In this document: positions 37,398 to 47,085 of the stretch, in pieces
How positions within the stretch are numbered: the stretch's first letter is position 1
How the letters are laid out: every line of letters begins with the position of its first letter
Origin: Podarcis pityusensis
Taxonomy: Eukaryota
Reading direction: 5' to 3' (one strand)
DNA: 64,000 bases
Assembly (NCBI GenBank): GCA_964106645.2
Contig: OZ067042.1
The notes under the pieces: generated by a model
What the model saw: the letters and a program-made list of their open reading frames with translations, nothing else
Databases searched by the model: none
What the model was told of the DNA's origin: nothing
Translations under genes and position numbers: made by a program

Positions 37398-40332
37398 TAG
37401 CGTGCTGTATGAATAGCACTATTGAGAGACCGCTTCCTGTGTGTTTTTTCTTACAAAACCAATAATTTTTTTAAGCGTAATTCTTGAAATAATAGCCAGA
37501 TGCGTCTCATGAAGCACTGCCAAAAACTGCACTTCACTTGTGCTAACGGAAGCTAAGTTAAGTCCTCGCTACCAATCTATATATAGAAACCCATCCCATT
37601 CTTGATTTGTATGTACTGTGTGTTGGGAAACTGGGCTTCAGGAAAACTCTCTTTGGTCCCCCATTAGTGGGAGTGATGGGTAGCCATACCTGCAATTGTA
37701 TGAAGTTGTCATGAGCTCTGCTGGGTGTGCTTCCTTTTCTCACAGTGTTCCTCAAGAAGTCCAAACAAGTATCTCGAGCATCTTTGGCCCTTCCACACTA
37801 GCAAGGGGGGAGCAAAGCGAGAGGCATGATGGAGCTCATCTCCTGAAGCTATTCTTCCCATTTCTTCCTCTGAATCACGCTCATAAATAGAAAGGAGAGA
37901 GAGAGAGATTCCTTTTTTCCTTCACCCCATTTTCTGCTCCGCTATTCCACAATTTGGATGCTGGATATATGTAAATCCCATGCAGCCTGCACTCCTCCTC
38001 CCTTTAATAATTGATCCAGTGTACACACATCCGTAGAAAGAAGTGTTTTGCACAGTGATTGAGAACTCCTGTGCTTATATAATTTGTGTGTACTGAATGC
38101 ACCAAGTTACAACTTACTGTCTAGGTAAGCGGCTGGGAACCTGTAGCCCTCTAGATGTTGAACCACAACTCTCCTCATTCCTGACCATTAGCCATGCTGG
38201 TGGAAACTGGAGTCCAGTATCATCTGAAGGGCCACAGGTTCCACACTGATGGCTGAGGACCTAACTCGGCTTCATTTAACCAATAACAAGAATGCCATTT
38301 AAATTACACTGAAAACATAATACACCCTCACAGTTCTGTGGGATAAACCTTCAAGTACTACCCAGACTTTATTCTCTTCACCAGACTTTCCACCTTTCAC
38401 CCAACCCCCCTCCACATTAGGAACTGAACTCCAGATATGTCTTAAAATGATACACAGAGGAAATTCTATACACAAATTAATGTAGCACAACTTTACAGAC
38501 CTTTGTGGAATAATTTTAAAGTGAACTGAATACTTATGGCAAACACACAGTTTGTGCAACATTCATGTTTCTGGCAGAAGAAGAGTCTTGGCCAGCCTAA
38601 AAACGTGAATGGGGAAGAAGTTCACCAAGATTTTTAAAGAGGTGTGATAGGAATCTATCTTAGCATTTTGAAGAGGAGTGCATAGCTTAGGAAACTGGGC
38701 CTTAGGAGCAGGGGGGTGCAGTGAAAAGAGCCATAGCTTGATACTAGATTGCATCCTTTGTGTGCAGGCTGTTCCAGGTTAAAGCCCCAACATCTCAACT
38801 AGATAGGATCTCAACTAGCAAGGCTGCAAGAAGCCTCTGTCCAACACCATGGAAAGCCACTGACTGCTAGAGTAATAAAGTAGACCAGGTTTATACGAGA
38901 GAAAGCATGAGGGTGGACCCTACGAAGTCTCAGAGGTCAGATCTGCACACCCCCTCTCATTAAACAACTATTTGGTTTGTCTATCTGCAGTCCTATCTAA
39001 TTTTCATCAGAGTGAAATATAAAGCTTCCTGCAATTTTCATTTGTAAGGAAAAGATGCAGTGTTGTCTGGTTCAAAGAAACAAGAGACAATGTTTACTTA
39101 ATGTTCTTGTCTCTCTAGGATTTCGTAGGCCATGTTCAAGCTGCACCTCAGCACATGTGCTTCGTAAGTGGGAAACATTTGCTGCTAGAAGGCACCAACT
39201 TAATTACAGAACCTGATTACATGTCTACTCTTACCTGGAGAACAGAATAGTCCTGGGAATACAGAAGCTGCCAACATTTGTATTGGGAAAGACCAGGAAC
39301 GAACCAGCCCCCTTCCTTGGCTCCCTTCATCCGTCCATATATTCAAAGATGCTCTCAGAAGGCAGGTGAAGCAGGTGTCATCACAAATGAGTATTTTGTG
39401 AGGCTCCTTCTTGCCTCAGGTTTAGTATTTGAAATGGGAGTTGGAGTTGGGGGAGGGCAACTTTTCTGCCAGAGCTTTTCAGCTGCAGCAGCCAGGAATA
39501 AATGCTAATGCCCAAAGGTACTGGATGTAATTATCAGTATATTGGGGTGGAATGTGTTAAATTTATCCCCAGTCACATGTTATACACAAACATGCATGTT
39601 AGTGTGCCATCAATGGAAGCATTTTTCAAAACAAAAAACAGGAGCCCAGAGTGCTCTGGGAAGGTAAGCAAGCCTTTGGGCAAACAATTTGGTGCAAACA
39701 CAGGAAAATGTCTTCAAGGGAGAGCACAAGGTTTTGTGTTGCCTTTGGGTCCTACCTAAAGCAAAATAAAACAATAAACATGGGGAGGAGGCAAGGGGCA
39801 GAGGAGGTGGGAACAAGCTGAGGATGGAGCAGTCTGTCCTAGGAGAGGACTGCAAGACTGAGCGGCATAGTCTCCTGGAGAAGAGACTCTGTTTCACGAA
39901 GAGAGGGGTGACCTATCATGGAAGTTGCATGCTCTTTTAAAAAGGAGGAGAAAAGGTAGGTGCATTCAGGAAGCTCACTGAGGACACACATTTCAGGCAT
40001 TGGTGATGAGTGGAAAGGGGAAGGCACCATATACGAAGGAGAATAGGAAGACTAGGTTCTGGTACATCTCATGCAAATGGGCTGGGTGCAAAAGGGGTTC
40101 AGTGTGCAGACCTGGGTGTGGGGATCCTAACCTTTACTAATGTAAATGATGATTGACTAATTTACCAGCCGAGGCTGCTTTTTGTTCTCAGGGCTACTGA
40201 ACAACTAAACAAGAGGCCAGCCCCTGTGGGGTCTACATATGGCAAAGAGTCAAGTGCAGAATAAGGCATTTGATACAGTACATCCAGAGTCCTTATACCT
40301 CTTGGGTAATGAGGATAAGCAAATTTCCAATA

Positions 40333-40539
40333 CAGTGGTACCTTGGGTTACATATGCTTCAGGTTACATACGCTTCAGGTTTCAGACTCCGCTAACCCAG
40401 AAATAGTACCTCGGGTTAAGAACTCCCGCAGCAGCAGCGGGAGGCCCCATTAGCTAAAGTGGTGCTTCAGGTTAAGAACAGTTTCAGGTTAAGAATGGAC
40501 CTCCGGAACGAATTAAGTACGAAAACAGAGGTACCACCG
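40333..40539. mobile_element. Tigger-like MITE, same family as 13458-13699 in opposite orientation
   Basis: CAGTGGTACC...GGTACCACCG ends, TA TSD, shared internal sequence. Confidence 0.87.
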
Positions 40540-41922: not shown

Positions 41923-42277
41923 CCTTTTTCTTTTTTTAAATGATATTTATTGAGAATTTAAAATTACAGAGTTAGAGAAGGAAAAAAAAGGAAAAGGAAA
42001 AAAGGTAGACAAAAAGAGAAATTAAACAATACAAGTCAATAAAAAAAACCAAAAAAACCAAAAAAAAAAACACACAATACATCAAAAACAAAAATAAACT
42101 AAAAATTTAAAAACAAATCCAATATTCCCAAATCTTTGTCTTTCATTAACTTGTTTCATCGACCTCCTCACACCTCCCTTTTTTGTATTCTAGTTATTAA
42201 TTATCTCAGCAAATCCTTTCCATCTTTCACTATATTCTGTCATTAAATAACCTTAATTTATTTTAACCTTATCTTAC
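41923..42277 (-). mobile_element. L1-family 3' UTR fragment (5'-truncated)
   Basis: Poly(T) and TTTATT on the + strand; homologous to 44244-44535; TSD TGAACTAATCTGTTT. Confidence 0.85.
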
Positions 42278-44223
42278 CATGAACTAATCTGTTTTCATGA
42301 ACTAATCTGTTTTCTTTCCTGCTTCAGTTTCACCTAATTGAAGTGCTATGAAATTATGGCTTTTAAAATGCTAATATGTATTGATTCCAATTACCGGCTG
42401 CCCTTAGTCTCTGCCTGTTCTATCAATGTCTAATGATCTTCTGCGTTTCTCCTTCATTCAGTTTGTCTTGGACTCCTGCCTTCCTTAGACTTGTCCATAG
42501 ACCTTCATCAGAAATACTGAGACTACAACCGTTTTAAGCCTCTCCAAGAGGCAGCACATTGCTGCTAACCATATTGGCCACTGGAATGCACCATAGCTCC
42601 AAACAAAAGCAGCAAGCAGCAACAGAAATGGCTGAGGCTATGTGCGCATTAGCTGCTTTAAATACAGCAAGGTTGCTTTTCCGTGCTGCCTTTGAAGTCA
42701 CATTTGCATGTTGCTGTACACACCAGAAAGGGGCACATCATAAAAAAGAAAAAGAAAGGGGCACATCACCTGCTCGGTTCCTCCACGCTTGCAGCCCCTC
42801 CTCCAAACTGTCATGAAGATGTCATCTGTGCATGCACATAGGCAACAGCTGTCTCAAATGGAGCTTACCTGCGACTTGCGTTTTCTAACTGGATGGAAGC
42901 TGGTTTGAGGAAAAGCACATCAAACAGCATTATTTATCAAGAAACTGCAGAATAGATATGAATTGTAGCTCACACCATGTCTATAAAGGACCAAGTGCCC
43001 ATGGTGGGAGCGCACTGGAGCCAGAGTAAATGGTGTGTACACAACCTAAGACTCAGGACTCATGCACACTTCTGTTTTCCCCACCACTTTCTCCAAGGAA
43101 AACCCGTGGTTTAGCACTGAACTGACACAAATGGCAGCTGGGTTTCCTACTGATTGCCGTTCATTCCAGTTTAGTGCAAAAAGCAATTTTTCTGGGGGAA
43201 AGTGGCAAGGCAAAGGCAAAACCACTCAGACGCAGGCCAAGAAAGCATGGGAGAAGTGAGTGTGTGGACAAGCCCTCAGTCATGTAGAATTGTCTTGCCT
43301 AAAGGCAACTCAGAGAACTAGTTTATAGAATCAGCAGATCAAGAAGGCAGGCTTCTTTTCTGGACTGCACCACACATCAGGGATGGCTCAATACATGTTA
43401 GCACCTGAGGTGAACTGTAGAATGCTCCCGGCCCCTGCCATGGAAGAAAGGATGAGTGAAGATGGGAAACAAGAGGGGAATAAAGCTCCACATTGAGAAC
43501 ATGGCGAGGAATCAAAGGTCATCGCGGGCCGGATCTGAATCCTCCTGCGTGGGTGCAGAGCCCAGGAGACCCCAGAGGGCATTCCCTGCCTTTTCCTCCC
43601 TGGGTTGGGGGGAGACTAGCAGGGCCTCTGATCTGCAGAGAGCCTGCTGTAGAGACGGCATTGGGAGGGAGGCTGCCGAGGAAGCAGCAGATCTGGCCTC
43701 CAAGGAGTGTGCCACATCCATTGCTGCCACTGTGTGTGCATCTCACTGAATGAAATTAAGCTCAACTTTCTCCCCAGCAAGTAAGTTTTCTGCCAACAAG
43801 GTTTTGATGTGGGGGTACATTTAATAGCCTCTCCTGAAGCAGTACTGTCCAAAAAAGATTGGATTCTACTGGTTGTATAAATTATTCCAGAGTACAAAAG
43901 GAGAGTGGTCCAGCCTATTTAGTGTAGCAGGTATTCTAAATGAGGCACGTTGAAGCAATCCCTCAGTCATTTCTACTAAGGGGTGCTTCAATAGGTGATA
44001 TTATATTGTAATGGGTTTTACTATCACATTTATGTGAATAGAGCTATCAGTGTGGGTTGCTTTAGGCCAAAACCTGGCCAGATTCTGGCACTTAACAAAT
44101 AACAGCCTGGGATATTTACATGATGTGTTTCCATGGAAGCTAATCATTAGATGATTGCTTTCATAGCCGGATCTTCACTGTATCTTCTGAATATGGCAAA
44201 ACCAGACATTTCCTGTTCCCTAG

Positions 44224-46346
44224 GTTTTTTTTTGTTTTTGTTTTTAAATGATATTTATTGAAATTTTTTTAAAATTACAAAACAGAACAAAACAGAAAAA
44301 TAAAAATAAAAAACAAACCACATCAAACAATACAAATTCAAAAAACAAAAATACACCACAAACACTCAAAAACAAATCCATCATTCTCGAATCCTCAACT
44401 TTCATTACCGTCTTTCTTTGACCTCCTCCTCCTCCCTTTTTTTGTATCCTAGTTGTTAATTGTTGCAGCAAATCCTTTCCATATTTCATAATATTCTGTC
44501 ATTACATTACCTTAATCTATTTTCATCTTATCTTACTGTAAAGAACCTTAAAACTTAAAACTTAAATCTTATTTTTACCAACTTCTCATAACCATAATAT
44601 TCTTACATAATTCTCTAAACATTTTTGCTAAAGCCAAGTAATTTCGTTCCAACATTTTTCTAACATTCATCAATTTTATAAAACAATCCTAGTAATAAAA
44701 AGAAAGAAATAAAAACAATCCAATCTTCATCCAGCGTCCCTTCCTCCAGGTCCCGGGTTTTGTCAGTCCTTTTTATCCCATTGATCTAGCGCATTAACCT
44801 GGTAACCTTATATCCGAGGCCCTTAAGTCCCTTCCATGTCCCTTCTGAGGCTCTTCTTCATATTCTCCTTTCACTCGTGGGAACTCCAGCTTGACAATGT
44901 TTTTGACCCTTCTCAACAAATCAGCCCCTTTTCCATAGTCCAGACTAAACTCCATGTGGTATTTAAAAACATGTTTCAGAATCCCTCCAAAATTAAGAGC
45001 CCCCACAGCCCCAAACATCTCACGGCCCATTGCCAGACTTGAAAAGTCCAAACATCCCTGCATAGGGGGGTCTATCCAACCCCCCATTTCCAAACCAGTC
45101 CAAACTTTATCTTTCCAAATCTGGCTTTTTCCAAGTTCATTTGTCAAATCCAAAAGCTCATGTTCCTGCAGGGCCACAGCTCCCTCCATCTCTGGCGCCC
45201 AAGATTCAGCAACATCCTCTTCCCTCATCTGTTCTGTCGGGGCACACTCCTGATTTAATTCCTGGGTGGGCTCCATATAGTTTCCCAGTGCCTGTTCAAA
45301 AATTCTGATCGCATCAGTCATCAAATCCGTCTTCTCATTTAGCTGTTCCAGTAGGGCATTTGTTTTACAGAGAGCACACAACAGAGCTTCTGAATACATT
45401 GTCCTACAAGGTCAGAAGTCTATTCCCACGATTGTAATCTGTAACAGATGCAAGCTCCCTGGAATTGGTTACAGTTTCACAGTCTCCCTCTAGGGAGAAA
45501 ACTTCTATTTGTTCTTTCTTTTAAGGACAAATCTAGCAACAAAGTTTCCTTTTTCAGATATTTTGTCAATATTTGTTCCTTTAAAATGCGAAGGGGAACA
45601 GTGGAATCACTATGTTTCTCTTCTTTTAGCTATCTGTCAAAAACGTTTGTCTCTGGTCAATGAGCTTCAAAAAATGTCAGTCCTGACATCCCGCTCCAGG
45701 ATCAAGACGGTGGAAAGTTACTTTACTTTACACTCACTTCTGCAGGTTTAAACAGTCCGAAAAAGATCCCCCCTCTTCTCCTGCTTCCGAAGGGGGTTCA
45801 ACAATTTTAAATGATGAAAGTTAATCTTTTAGAAGCGATTTTCTGAGCTCTAGTTTGCCTTGTCTTTGCTTTAATCTATCTACAAAGAAAAGGAAGGCTG
45901 ACTTCCTGTTTAGACCTTCCCGTTTCAGTGCCAAATTGAAGTAAACTTTTAAGTCCAATTTTCCTTTCTGCTCGCAAGTCCTTATTTAAAGTCCAATTGT
46001 CCGAAATTTAAGTACTCACGGGTGATTATTTTAGAAGCCAAATTGTCCCAGGAAAAAGGCAGCGCTCTCCGGCAATGGCTGTGCGGCTTCGCTCCATGGA
46101 AGAAGCAGTTGACTCTCAGCACCGCGCCACTTCCCCCTCTTCGCTTCGGAGCCCGTTAATGGGTTCCTTTGCGGGTTGGGGGGGCGCTAAGGGTGCCCGC
46201 CGAGTCCCATGGTCACAGGCTTCATCCGCCTGTGATTTTTGAAAGGGTCCCCGCTTCGCCATAGCAGAAAAGACCCGTTTCGCGTGGAGCTAGTCCCTCC
46301 AGATCAGAGGGAATCCGCCATTGCCGATGGCGCCACCCCGGAAGTC
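44224..46346 (-). mobile_element. Full-length non-autonomous L1-derived retroposon (half-L1-like), about 2.1 kb
   Basis: 13-bp TSD TCCTGTTCCCTAG at 44211-44223 and 46347-46359; CpG-rich 5' end GACTTCCGG..AATGGCGG; L1 3' UTR, AATAAA and poly(A); no RT or endonuclease. Confidence 0.85.
44794..45399 (-). CDS. 201-aa ORF of the non-autonomous L1 derivative; acidic, with a possible N-terminal coiled coil; function unknown
   Basis: Uninterrupted ATG (ACAATG) to TAA in the element's sense orientation, between the 5' UTR and the ORF2 remnant. Confidence 0.55.
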   Translation of the reverse strand: MYSEALLCALCKTNALLEQLNEKTDLMTDAIRIFEQALGNYMEPTQELNQECAPTEQMREEDVAESWAPEMEGAVALQEHELLDLTNELGKSQIWKDKVWTGLEMGGWIDPPMQGCLDFSSLAMGREMFGAVGALNFGGILKHVFKYHMEFSLDYGKGADLLRRVKNIVKLEFPRVKGEYEEEPQKGHGRDLRASDIRLPG

Positions 46347-46366
46347 TCCTGTTCCCTAGTTAAATA

Positions 46367-46610
46367 CAGTCATACCTCGGGTTGAAGTTGCTTCAGGTTG
46401 AGCGCTTTCGGGTTGCGCTCCACGGCGACCCAGAAGTAACGGAATGCGTTACTTCCGGGTTTTGCCGCTTGCGCATGCGCAGATGGTCAAAATGATGTCA
46501 CGCGCATACGCAGAAGCGGCGACCCGCGCACGCACAGATGCGGGTTGCATTCGATTCTGGATGCGAACAGGGTTCTGGAACGGATCCCGTTCATATCCAA
46601 AGGTATGCTG
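46367..46610. mobile_element. Tigger-like MITE
   Basis: TA|CAGTCATACCTCGG...CCAAAGGTATGCTG imperfect TIRs; CpG-rich interior. Confidence 0.7.
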
Positions 46611-46624
46611 CAATCTTAAGGGTG

Positions 46625-47085
46625 TGTGACAGGAACAAAAGTGTTAGAATTCCTGCTCCGTGATTGCAGTCAGGGGCTTTTTGTCTGTCACATGACGGTG
46701 TATGTTTTGACTCCAAAAAAGTGGGAAGTGACGGAGACAGGATGTTTGTGTTACTGTGTTCTGTGAAGTGGGACTATTGTCCTTTGTTCTTTCTCTTTGC
46801 TGTCTGGTGCTAGAGAGAGGGAGCCATGTTGCAGTGCTCCGTGTGTGTTTATATTTAAATAAAGTAGATTAGCCAAAATGCTGAGTTGCTGAGGTCTGTC
46901 ACACAAGCTGTGAAGACTCTGCAGATCCCTAAGTGTGCTGGTGTCTGTTGGCATCGGTCGCTGTGATGTTCAGGCAGAAGAAAGTTTTTGAAGCTCCCGG
47001 ACGAAAGACCAGGAGGGAGAGAACATGCCAGTCAGGCATGTGTCTCTGCCAGGGTCCTTCTCGAGGGTAGGCTGAGCTCCTGACA
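46625..47085 (+). mobile_element. Probable solo LTR
   Basis: TGTGA...TGACA ends and an internal AATAAA at about 46858; no TSD found. Confidence 0.4.

What the first reader, a model, noticed from the sequence alone, without database searches (positions are those of the whole stretch)
44211..46359. Full-length non-autonomous L1 derivative carrying an intact, unrecognised 201-aa protein
Seen: a perfect 13-bp TSD brackets 2.1 kb on the minus strand. The element starts with an L1-like CpG-rich internal promoter (ETS-like ACTTCCGG, YY1-like AATGGCGG). It has one intact ORF (45399-44794) and ends in an L1 3' UTR with poly(A). Just after the ORF is a decayed copy of the last L1 ORF2 codons: 44770-44660 reads RTDKTRDLEEGTLDEDW, against MTGRIRDQEEESVEEDW in the true L1 fragment at about 55970-55865. 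Known: half-L1 (HAL1) elements keep only ORF1 and borrow ORF2 in trans. Inference: this ORF lacks the RRNNLRI-type RRM signature I would expect in L1 ORF1p. It may be a lizard L1-parasitic family maintaining a novel or highly diverged protein, for example a coiled-coil partner or competitor of ORF1p. The fragment at 41923-42277 is closer to this element than to the 55.5-kb L1, which suggests a multi-copy family.
Basis: partly seen in the sequence, partly recalled or inferred. Interest (0 to 1): 0.8.

Follow-up and report, generated by a model that had tools for sequence, protein, structure and literature searches.

The report
Lizard half-L1 with shrunken ORF1 protein
This is one copy of a very abundant wall-lizard jumping element that has lost the LINE-1 copying enzyme and kept, under selection, a shortened acidic remnant of the LINE-1 ORF1 protein, so it is a reptile counterpart of mammalian half-L1 (HAL1) elements and not the carrier of an orphan protein.

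Summary
A perfect 13-bp target-site duplication (46347-46359 and 44211-44223) brackets a 2.1-kb minus-strand insert. The insert has a CpG-rich leader, one intact 201-aa ORF, a decayed ORF2 end, an L1 3'UTR, AATAAA and an A-tail.

It is not a one-off deletion. Other Podarcis loci carry copies that start at the same first base, one with its own duplication. Two DNA runs each gave about 17,000 matching contig pieces.

Leader and tail are homologous to genuine lacertid L1s.

The "unrecognised" protein is a diverged, shortened ORF1p. A profile-profile comparison with lacertid L1 ORF1p gives 98% probability (E 4e-14) over 197 columns. The coiled-coil half and the C-terminal-domain half each match separately. 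About 40 residues of the RRM core are deleted. All members are acidic (pI 4.7-6.0, against 8.3-9.1 for ORF1p).

dN/dS is 0.35-0.56 in frame, against 0.17-0.18 for autonomous ORF1. A C-terminal peptide (DLRASD..PG) is conserved with synonymous codon changes.

Best reading: a HAL1-like L1 parasite whose ORF1p remnant probably works as a coiled-coil adaptor. That function is inferred.

The scan noted this kind of element twice before on other DNA of this genome. One follow-up called the protein an orphan, and that is corrected here.

The parts
46347..46359 (.). Target-site duplication, copy at the element's 5' side
   Evidence: Identical 13 bases at 44211-44223
44211..44223 (.). Target-site duplication, copy after the A-tail
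   Evidence: The pre-insertion site reads ..ATTTAA|CTAGG.., T-rich then A-rich, as expected for L1 endonuclease
44224..46346 (-). Whole element: a 2.1-kb HAL1-like non-autonomous L1 derivative
   Evidence: Matches an independent P. lilfordi copy end to end at 92.6%, and not in the flanks. Further copies were seen. About 17,000 contig pieces per DNA run lie on it
45400..46346 (-). L1-derived 5' leader (947 nt) with a CpG-rich start that is the presumed internal promoter
   Evidence: 69.5-71% identical to the 5'UTRs of genuine L1s L007 and L011, from the same first base in L007. CpG o/e is 0.85-0.91 in the first 400 nt. It holds six short out-of-frame upstream ATGs
44794..45399 (-). ORF of 201 aa: a shortened, acidic derivative of L1 ORF1p
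   Evidence: hhalign against lacertid ORF1p gives 98.2%, E 4e-14, 197 columns. The two halves match separately and reversed controls fail. dN/dS is 0.35-0.56. pI is 4.73
45274..45390 (-). Codons 4-42: heptad-repeat helix homologous to the ORF1p coiled coil
   Evidence: AlphaFold2 gives a helix at 4-42 with pLDDT above 90. BLASTP against P. raffonei ORF1p gives 33% over 115 aa
44797..44832 (-). Last 12 codons (RDLRASDIRLPG): the most conserved part of the family protein
   Evidence: Nearly invariant in 13 relatives. The codons differ synonymously among 9 loci
44660..44785 (-). Decayed last ~40 codons of L1 ORF2 including its stop, out of frame with the ORF
   Evidence: The same remnant follows the stop in most of the fetched relatives, including deep ones
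44246..44659 (-). L1-type 3'UTR with a conserved purine-rich block at 44400-44492
   Evidence: Alignments A2 and A8. The blocks are invariant across three L1s and six family copies. No structure with covariation was found
44224..44259 (-). AATAAA (44254-44259) and A-rich tail
   Evidence: The terminal motif after AATAAA is the same as in the genuine L1 L007
41920..42277 (-). 5'-truncated copy of the same kind of 3' end
   Evidence: 80% identical to the element's 3'UTR. It could come from the family or from a partner L1
55560..55981 (-). Strongly 5'-truncated genuine L1: the last 37 ORF2 codons and the 3'UTR
   Evidence: 86% aa identity to the ORF2 end of an RT-bearing L1 (L002)

Best explanation
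The insert is one copy of a high-copy, non-autonomous LINE-1 derivative of lacertid (Podarcis-type) lizards, built like a mammalian half-L1 (HAL1).

Structure. It has an L1 leader with its internal promoter, one ORF descended from L1 ORF1, no endonuclease or reverse transcriptase, the last ~40 codons of ORF2, and the L1 3'UTR and polyadenylation signal.

Mobilisation (inferred). It is transcribed from its own leader and copied into new sites by ORF2p supplied by autonomous L1s. This is inferred from the duplications, the A-tail and the T-rich/A-rich target sites.

The protein (shown). The ORF is a reduced ORF1p. It keeps the coiled-coil helix and a degenerate C-terminal domain. It has lost the basic N-terminus and the RRM core (the stretch that aligns with human ORF1p ..RHIIVRF.. 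through ..IRLTV). It has turned acidic and ends in a conserved peptide.

What the protein does (my inference, about 40% likely). It no longer binds RNA itself. It acts in cis as an adaptor, through coiled-coil assembly with itself or with L1 ORF1p and/or through the C-terminal peptide. That would bring the parasite RNA into L1 particles or to ORF2p.
For: Structure and insertion:
- Perfect 13-bp duplication, AATAAA and A-tail.
- An independent full-length copy with its own ~17-bp duplication at a TT|AAAA site.
- Further full-length or truncated copies and a second subfamily with the same layout.
- 17,842 and 16,658 contig pieces at 85% or more in two DNA runs. The flank has single-copy depth of 25 against about 1e5 summed depth on the element.

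L1 origin:
- The leader is ~70% identical to genuine L1 5'UTRs, from the same first base in L007.
- The ORF2 end, the 3'UTR and the terminal motif are shared with L1.
- The genuine L1s carry Exo_endo_phos and RVT_1 domains.

ORF is ORF1p-derived:
- An HMM search of 1.8 billion proteins found only ~200-aa relatives and lacertid ORF1p.
- hhalign gives 98.2%, E 4e-14. The N-half gives 95%, E 3e-8, and the CTD half gives 88%, E 3e-6. Reversed controls give E 0.5.
- The lacertid ORF1p profile hits human/mouse L1 ORF1p structures.
- On a tree, the family and ORF1p are separated by a 100/100 branch.

Selection:
- In-frame dN/dS is lowest in all 10 pairs.
- There are synonymous changes within the conserved C-terminal peptide.
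- Intact ORFs persist across lineages with dS above 1.

Loss of RNA-binding features:
- About 40 residues of the RRM core are missing.
- pI is 4.7-6.0, against 8.3-9.1 for ORF1p.
- Only the helix at 4-42 is predicted with confidence.
Against: - There is no direct evidence of translation. The leader has six upstream ATGs.
- The RNA evidence rests on contigs from runs that are only guessed to be RNA.
- The selection signal is moderate. Out-of-frame controls reach as low as 0.44, and some confidence intervals overlap.
- The intact relatives came from protein databases, which hold only open frames.
- One fetched copy (L005) is frameshifted. In run X1 about half of the depth at the G6 run (45080) lacks one base.
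- AlphaFold2 predicts no folded domain beyond the N-terminal helix.
- Mobilisation in trans by L1 ORF2p and any adaptor role are inferred, not shown.
Confidence: 0.78

Rival explanations
1. The element is a real L1-mobilised family, but the ORF is a decaying relic without protein function. Only the leader and the L1 3' end matter. The frame looks conserved because active masters are young and because open frames were picked from protein databases.
For: - Low-confidence fold.
- The RRM core is lost.
- The gap between in-frame and out-of-frame dN/dS is only moderate.
- Frameshifted copies are common.
- The 5'UTR is better conserved than the ORF between subfamilies.
Against: - ORFs of 182-215 aa persist in lineages with dS above 1 and ~30% identity.
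- In-frame dN/dS is lowest in all 10 pairs.
- The C-terminal peptide is conserved through synonymous changes.
- The family has shifted consistently to acidic pI, which random decay does not predict.
Confidence: 0.14
2. The protein works against L1 and not for the parasite. As an RRM-less coiled-coil partner it would poison ORF1p trimers, acting as a dominant-negative competitor. The element would spread despite this, or the host would benefit.
For: - The coiled-coil helix is retained while the RNA-binding parts are lost and the charge is acidic.
- Such truncated oligomerisation partners are classic dominant negatives (general knowledge).
Against: - A parasite that depends on L1 ORF2p gains nothing by shutting L1 down.
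- The family is very abundant alongside L1s with intact-looking ORF1.
- The N@d-type coiled-coil motifs of the L1 protein are not kept in the family, so heterotrimer formation is uncertain.
Confidence: 0.06
3. It is a single internally deleted L1 copy, or a processed retrocopy of a host mRNA.
For: The duplication and A-tail alone would fit either.
Against: - Several independent copies share the same ends and internal junction.
- Thousands of contig pieces lie on the element.
- The leader and tail are L1 sequence.
Confidence: 0.01

Closest known systems
Mammalian HAL1 (half-L1) elements (Smit 1999; Bao & Jurka 2010, as summarised in PMC5753468)
   Same: A non-autonomous L1 derivative that encodes only an ORF1 product. 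It is multi-copy, with subfamilies. It inserts in the L1 manner with duplications and an A-tail, and presumably borrows ORF2p.
   Different: - The host is a lacertid lizard, and the origin is independent, from lacertid L1.
- The ORF1 product is cut to ~200 aa, lacks the basic N-terminus and the RRM core, is acidic, and ends in a family-specific conserved peptide.
- A remnant of the ORF2 end is kept.
- No HAL1 from lizards was found in the held literature. Repbase and Dfam could not be searched.
Autonomous lacertid L1 and its ORF1p (loci L007 and L011; proteins P0012, P0014-P0021)
   Same: The same first bases and leader (~70% identity). Homologous coiled coil and C-terminal domain. The same ORF2 end, 3'UTR blocks and terminal motif.
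   Different: - No endonuclease or reverse transcriptase.
- ORF of 201 aa against ~370 aa.
- pI 4.7 against 8.3-9.1.
- dN/dS 0.35-0.56 against 0.17-0.18.
L1TD1, the domesticated ORF1p-derived host gene of mammals (PMC4161310)
   Same: An ORF1p-derived protein that exists outside an autonomous L1 and may interact with L1 particles.
   Different: L1TD1 is a single-copy host gene that keeps its RRM and CTD modules. Here the protein sits in a mobile element with thousands of copies and has lost the RRM core.
SINEs and composite elements that carry a LINE 3' tail (e.g. SVA, LAVA)
   Same: They depend on the LINE machinery and share the partner's 3' end.
   Different: Those are non-coding. This family keeps a translated-looking ORF and the L1 promoter.

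Membership tests
HAL1-type (ORF1-only) non-autonomous L1 derivative | The ends derive from L1 (5'UTR/promoter and 3' end) | tested here: met
   The leader is 69.5-71% identical to two genuine L1s, from the same first base in L007. The ORF2 end, 3'UTR and terminal motif are shared
HAL1-type (ORF1-only) non-autonomous L1 derivative | Encodes an ORF1 product and no ORF2 (no EN, no RT) | tested here: met
   The ORF is homologous to ORF1p. Only the last ~40 ORF2 codons remain. The element is 2.1 kb
HAL1-type (ORF1-only) non-autonomous L1 derivative | Multi-copy, with L1-type insertions (duplications, A-tail, T/A-rich target) | tested here: met
HAL1-type (ORF1-only) non-autonomous L1 derivative | Mobilised in trans by L1 ORF2p | not testable with these tools
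   Inferred from the insertion signatures and the shared 3' end. It needs a retrotransposition assay
HAL1-type (ORF1-only) non-autonomous L1 derivative | Descent from the described mammalian HAL1 lineages | tested here: not met
   The nearest relatives are lacertid L1 sequences. This is an independent, analogous origin
L1 ORF1p (coiled coil + RRM + C-terminal domain) | N-terminal trimerising coiled coil | tested here: met
   Helix at 4-42 with pLDDT above 90 and a heptad pattern. It is homologous to the ORF1p coil. Oligomeric state was not tested
L1 ORF1p (coiled coil + RRM + C-terminal domain) | Intact RRM | tested here: not met
   The NLRI-type strand is unrecognisable. About 40 residues, equivalent to human ..RHIIVRF.. 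through ..IRLTV, are deleted in all members
L1 ORF1p (coiled coil + RRM + C-terminal domain) | C-terminal domain | tested here: inconclusive
   Sequence homology gives 88% probability, E 3e-6. AlphaFold2 does not fold it, and the arginines that matter in human ORF1p (from memory) are not kept
L1 ORF1p (coiled coil + RRM + C-terminal domain) | Basic, nucleic-acid-binding charge | tested here: not met
   pI is 4.7-6.0 in nine family members, against 8.3-9.1 in six lacertid ORF1p
L1 ORF1p (coiled coil + RRM + C-terminal domain) | Match to Pfam ORF1 models | tested here: not met
   No Pfam hit. The genuine lacertid ORF1p also fails Pfam, so this test has little weight

The most novel reading that the evidence does not exclude
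The family encodes a minimal, RNA-binding-dead ORF1p remnant: a coiled coil plus a conserved C-terminal peptide. It works as an adaptor that docks the parasite's own RNA-ribosome complex onto L1 ORF1p trimers or directly onto ORF2p. That would be a protein-based way of hijacking a LINE, distinct from the RNA-mimicry of SINEs and from HAL1s with a complete ORF1p.
Probability: 0.25. Interest if true: 0.7.

Novelty: new variant of a known kind. Interest (0 to 1): 0.5.

Why it matters
In the papers I could read, HAL1 elements are described only from mammals, and there they are said to encode ORF1p. This lizard family arose independently, reached thousands of copies, and split into subfamilies that are only ~30% identical. 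Throughout, it kept only part of ORF1p: the coiled coil, a degenerate C-terminal domain and a short conserved end peptide. It dropped the RRM core and the positive charge.

That is a natural deletion experiment on which parts of ORF1p a LINE-dependent RNA needs in cis. It gives a testable handle on how ORF1p parts contribute to recruiting ORF2p.

For annotators, it explains a set of 'hypothetical proteins' in Podarcis gene sets.

Tried and rejected
- Pfam on the ORF and on eight relatives: nothing.
- PDB by sequence and by profile of the family: nothing.
- ESM Atlas features: only weak unnamed hits, and recognition was below the useful level.
- AlphaFold2 with 6 sequences: pLDDT 37.5. With 20 sequences, only the N-terminal helix is confident. 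I therefore ran no fold search, because a single helix and low-confidence coil give meaningless matches.
- Rfam on 43800-46800: no family.
- Consensus folding of the conserved 3'UTR block: -1.7 kcal/mol and no real covariation, so I claim no RNA structure.
- tRNA scan of the repeat that hosts the insertion: none.
- tblastn of genuine ORF1p against the window: no hit at E 0.01 or better. The homology is visible only to profiles.
- Bao & Jurka 2010 is not held, so the HAL1 definition comes from PMC5753468.
- The species of the Logan contigs that carry the deepest relatives could not be learned, so the age and host range of the family stay open.
- P0006 is a spliced gene-model artefact and was not used.
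Full report
**1. Observation**

On the minus strand, the 13-base string CTAGGGAACAGGA occurs at 46359-46347 and again at 44223-44211.

- The element lies between them, from 46346 down to 44224.
- It begins GACTTCCGG.. and carries AATGGCGG 25 bases further in.
- Its first 400 nt are CpG-rich (observed/expected 0.85-0.91, G+C 61-47%).
- The only long ORF on that strand is 45399-44794, 201 aa.
- Directly after its stop, in another frame, 44785-44660 reads a decayed ORF2 end down to a ..KIDEC-stop. The genuine L1 fragment at 55981-55862 reads ..KINEC-stop.
- AATAAA (44259-44254) and an A-rich tail close the element.

**2. A family, not a single deletion product**

- The ORF has a 93% identical 'hypothetical protein' in Podarcis lilfordi.
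- Its locus (L001) aligns with the window element from the first base to the tail at 92.6%, and not at all in the flanks.
- L001 has its own duplication of about 17 bases at a TT|AAAA site.
- L005 holds another full-length copy (85%) with a frameshifted ORF.
- L002 holds a full-length copy of a second subfamily. Its untranslated parts are 75-80% identical, and its 199-aa ORF is only 33% identical. L004 is a 5'-truncated copy of that subfamily.
- I laid public runs on 43835-46746. This gave 17,842 and 16,658 contig pieces at 85% or more in two DNA runs, spread over leader, ORF and tail alike.
- In run X3 the left flank is covered once at depth about 25, and the bins of the element sum to about 1e5-3.6e5. 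The tool warns that this is not a copy number. I read it only as 'thousands of copies'.
- Two runs that are guessed to be RNA gave 882 and 322 pieces. That is compatible with transcription but does not prove it.
- Word matches occur in runs of at least seven coded organisms.

**3. The ends are L1**

- L007 and L011 are P. lilfordi L1s with ORF1 followed by Exo_endo_phos. L007 also shows RVT_1 in the gene table, and both match a lacertid RT-bearing ORF2.
- The first 610-740 nt of the element's leader align to their 5'UTRs at 69.5-71%.
- In the 5'-end alignment, the four full-length family copies and L1 L007 begin at the same base. They share the ACTTCCGG and AATGGCGG motifs.
- The last 550 nt align to the ORF2 end and 3'UTR of L007 at 65%.
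- A multiple alignment shows the ORF2 codons, several invariant purine-rich 3'UTR blocks and the same terminal motif after AATAAA.
- The ETS-like and YY1-like readings of the two 5' motifs rest on my memory of consensus sites. Their conservation is shown. Their function is not.

**4. The protein is a reduced ORF1p**

- Pfam, PDB sequence searches and Atlas features gave nothing.
- A profile of six family members was searched against 1.84 billion representatives. It found only ten proteins:
  - further ORFs of 182-215 aa (plus one 87-aa fragment) ending in ..DLRASD..P(G/D);
  - two longer proteins, P0009 (P. raffonei) and P0012 (P. lilfordi), whose residues 55-170 match the family's N-terminal half.
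- P0012 is the ORF1 of L1 L007.
- Its full-length relatives are P0014-P0021, about 355-376 aa. One of them is named 'L1 transposable element RRM domain-containing protein' by UniRef.
- As a profile, these relatives hit the solved human/mouse L1 ORF1p RRM-CTD structures (2ldy E 1.2e-3, 2ykp E 1.7e-3).
- Profile-profile comparison of the 14-member family alignment with the 9-member ORF1p alignment gives probability 98.2%, E 4e-14, with 197 aligned columns. Family positions 1-199 align to ORF1p 50-319.
- Cut in two, the coiled-coil half (95.1%, E 3e-8) and the C-terminal-domain half (87.8%, E 3e-6) each match. Reversed controls give E about 0.5.

The joint alignment shows what is kept:
- the start of the coil;
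- the stretch up to the ..AFRLG-type strand;
- the ..Y-G-.-L-..-LL.. and ..EFP.. motifs of the C-terminal domain;
- in one subfamily, the KGKK.. stretch;
- the ..EDLQKG.. tail.

It also shows what is lost:
- the basic first ~50 residues;
- several coil heptads;
- about 40 residues that align with human ..RHIIVRF.. through ..IRLTV, that is, the central strand, second helix and last strand of the RRM.

Further properties:
- All nine family proteins examined are acidic (pI 4.7-6.0, net charge -2 to -16), and six lacertid ORF1p are basic (pI 8.3-9.1).
- AlphaFold2 with the joint alignment predicts a helix at 4-42 with pLDDT above 90 and nothing confident after it.
- That helix has a clean 3-4 hydrophobic spacing.
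- On a maximum-likelihood tree, the nine family proteins and the eight ORF1p lie on either side of a 100/100 branch (the fragments P0002, P0011 and P0012 were left out). This fits one origin.
- So does the ORF2-end remnant, which is visible just after the stop in most of the fetched relatives, including deep ones.

**5. Selection**

- Nei-Gojobori dN/dS is 0.35-0.56 in ten pairs ranging from dS 0.09 to 1.3.
- The same alignments read in the two wrong frames give 0.44-1.24. The true frame is the lowest in every pair, though some intervals overlap.
- Autonomous ORF1 (L011 against L007) gives 0.17-0.18, and 0.11 in the RRM.
- The parasite's ORF is therefore constrained, but two to three times less than ORF1 of the autonomous element.
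- The last 12 codons are the best conserved part of the protein, and their codons differ synonymously among nine loci. The constraint is therefore on the peptide, not on the RNA.

Caveats:
- The relatives came from protein databases, which hold only open frames.
- L005 is frameshifted.
- At the G6 and C6 runs (45085-45080 and 45070-45065), many contigs lack one base.

**6. How it probably works**

Shown:
- the structure;
- the L1 origin of all three parts;
- high copy number;
- independent insertions with L1-type signatures;
- protein-level constraint.

Inferred:
- transcription from the L1-type leader;
- reverse transcription by ORF2p of autonomous L1s.

On the protein, my best guess (about 40%) is an adaptor acting in cis. 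The coiled coil would assemble with itself or with L1 ORF1p, or the conserved end peptide would bind a partner. Either would place the parasite RNA in an L1 particle without any RNA binding of its own. The relic reading and the dominant-negative reading remain open (see rivals).

**7. Comparison and novelty**

By the definition in PMC5753468, HAL1 is a non-autonomous L1 derivative that encodes only ORF1p and arose several times in mammals. This element works like a HAL1 and meets the structural criteria.

It is not a member of the mammalian lineages. Its ORF1 product fails the RRM and charge criteria of ORF1p.

I found no lizard HAL1 in the held literature. Repbase and Dfam could not be searched.

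I therefore rate it a new variant of a known kind.

The scan had already noted the same kind of element twice on other DNA of this genome (s1-722486 with a 206-aa ORF, s1-717189 with a 205-aa ORF). The follow-up of the first called the protein one 'that matches nothing known'. The 206-aa type (P0005) is part of my family profile, so that statement is corrected here.

**8. Limits**

- I have no direct proof of translation or mobility.
- There is no exact copy count.
- The species of the deepest relatives are unknown.
- The partner L1 lineage was not identified. The two L1s examined are only 65-71% identical in the shared parts.

Noticed in passing
window 46360-46750 (and 40329-40381): The element is inserted into another high-copy repeat. 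This flank has very high summed depth in all four runs, including the two guessed to be RNA. It shares a 37-base motif with 40329-40381. No tRNA-like head was found.
   Followed up: partly
proteins P0014-P0021 (lacertid L1 ORF1p), profile positions 53-142: The coiled coil of lacertid L1 ORF1p carries repeated ..NT.SI.. motifs. It matches a trimeric autotransporter adhesin coiled-coil fragment (2wpq, E 8.5e-6) better than it matches human ORF1p. This suggests asparagine-layer trimer geometry. The family protein has lost these motifs.
   Followed up: no
proteins P0022, P0023 (Podarcis muralis): Two TRIM39-like gene models (RING and B-box domains) are 67-72% identical to L1 ORF1p over half of its length. 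They are either annotation chimeras or L1 ORF1 sequence taken up into TRIM genes.
   Followed up: no
L002 5259-7086 and L007 5259-6964: A family copy (L002) and a genuine L1 (L007) in P. lilfordi both sit directly next to C2H2 zinc-finger arrays with an 84-base period.
   Followed up: no
window 44400-44492 (minus strand): The 3'UTR blocks ..GGAAAGGATTTGCTG.., ..GAATACAAA.. and a G-rich purine tract ..GAGGAGGTC.. are invariant across three L1s and six family copies that are otherwise 65-80% identical. No covarying structure was found. They may be a sequence signal or a G-rich tract like the one I recall from mammalian L1 3'UTRs.
   Followed up: partly
window 45065-45085 (minus strand, ORF codons ~105-112): G6 and C6 homopolymer runs lie inside the ORF. 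One-base-shorter versions make up to 47% of contig depth in run X1 but under 1% in X3, and copy L005 changes frame at this spot. This may be an indel hotspot or assembly noise.
   Followed up: partly
L002 7081-7458: The leader of the second-subfamily copy holds a 106-125-aa ORF that was called as a gene. The window copy has only short upstream ORFs (5-48 codons) there, so it does not look conserved.
   Followed up: partly
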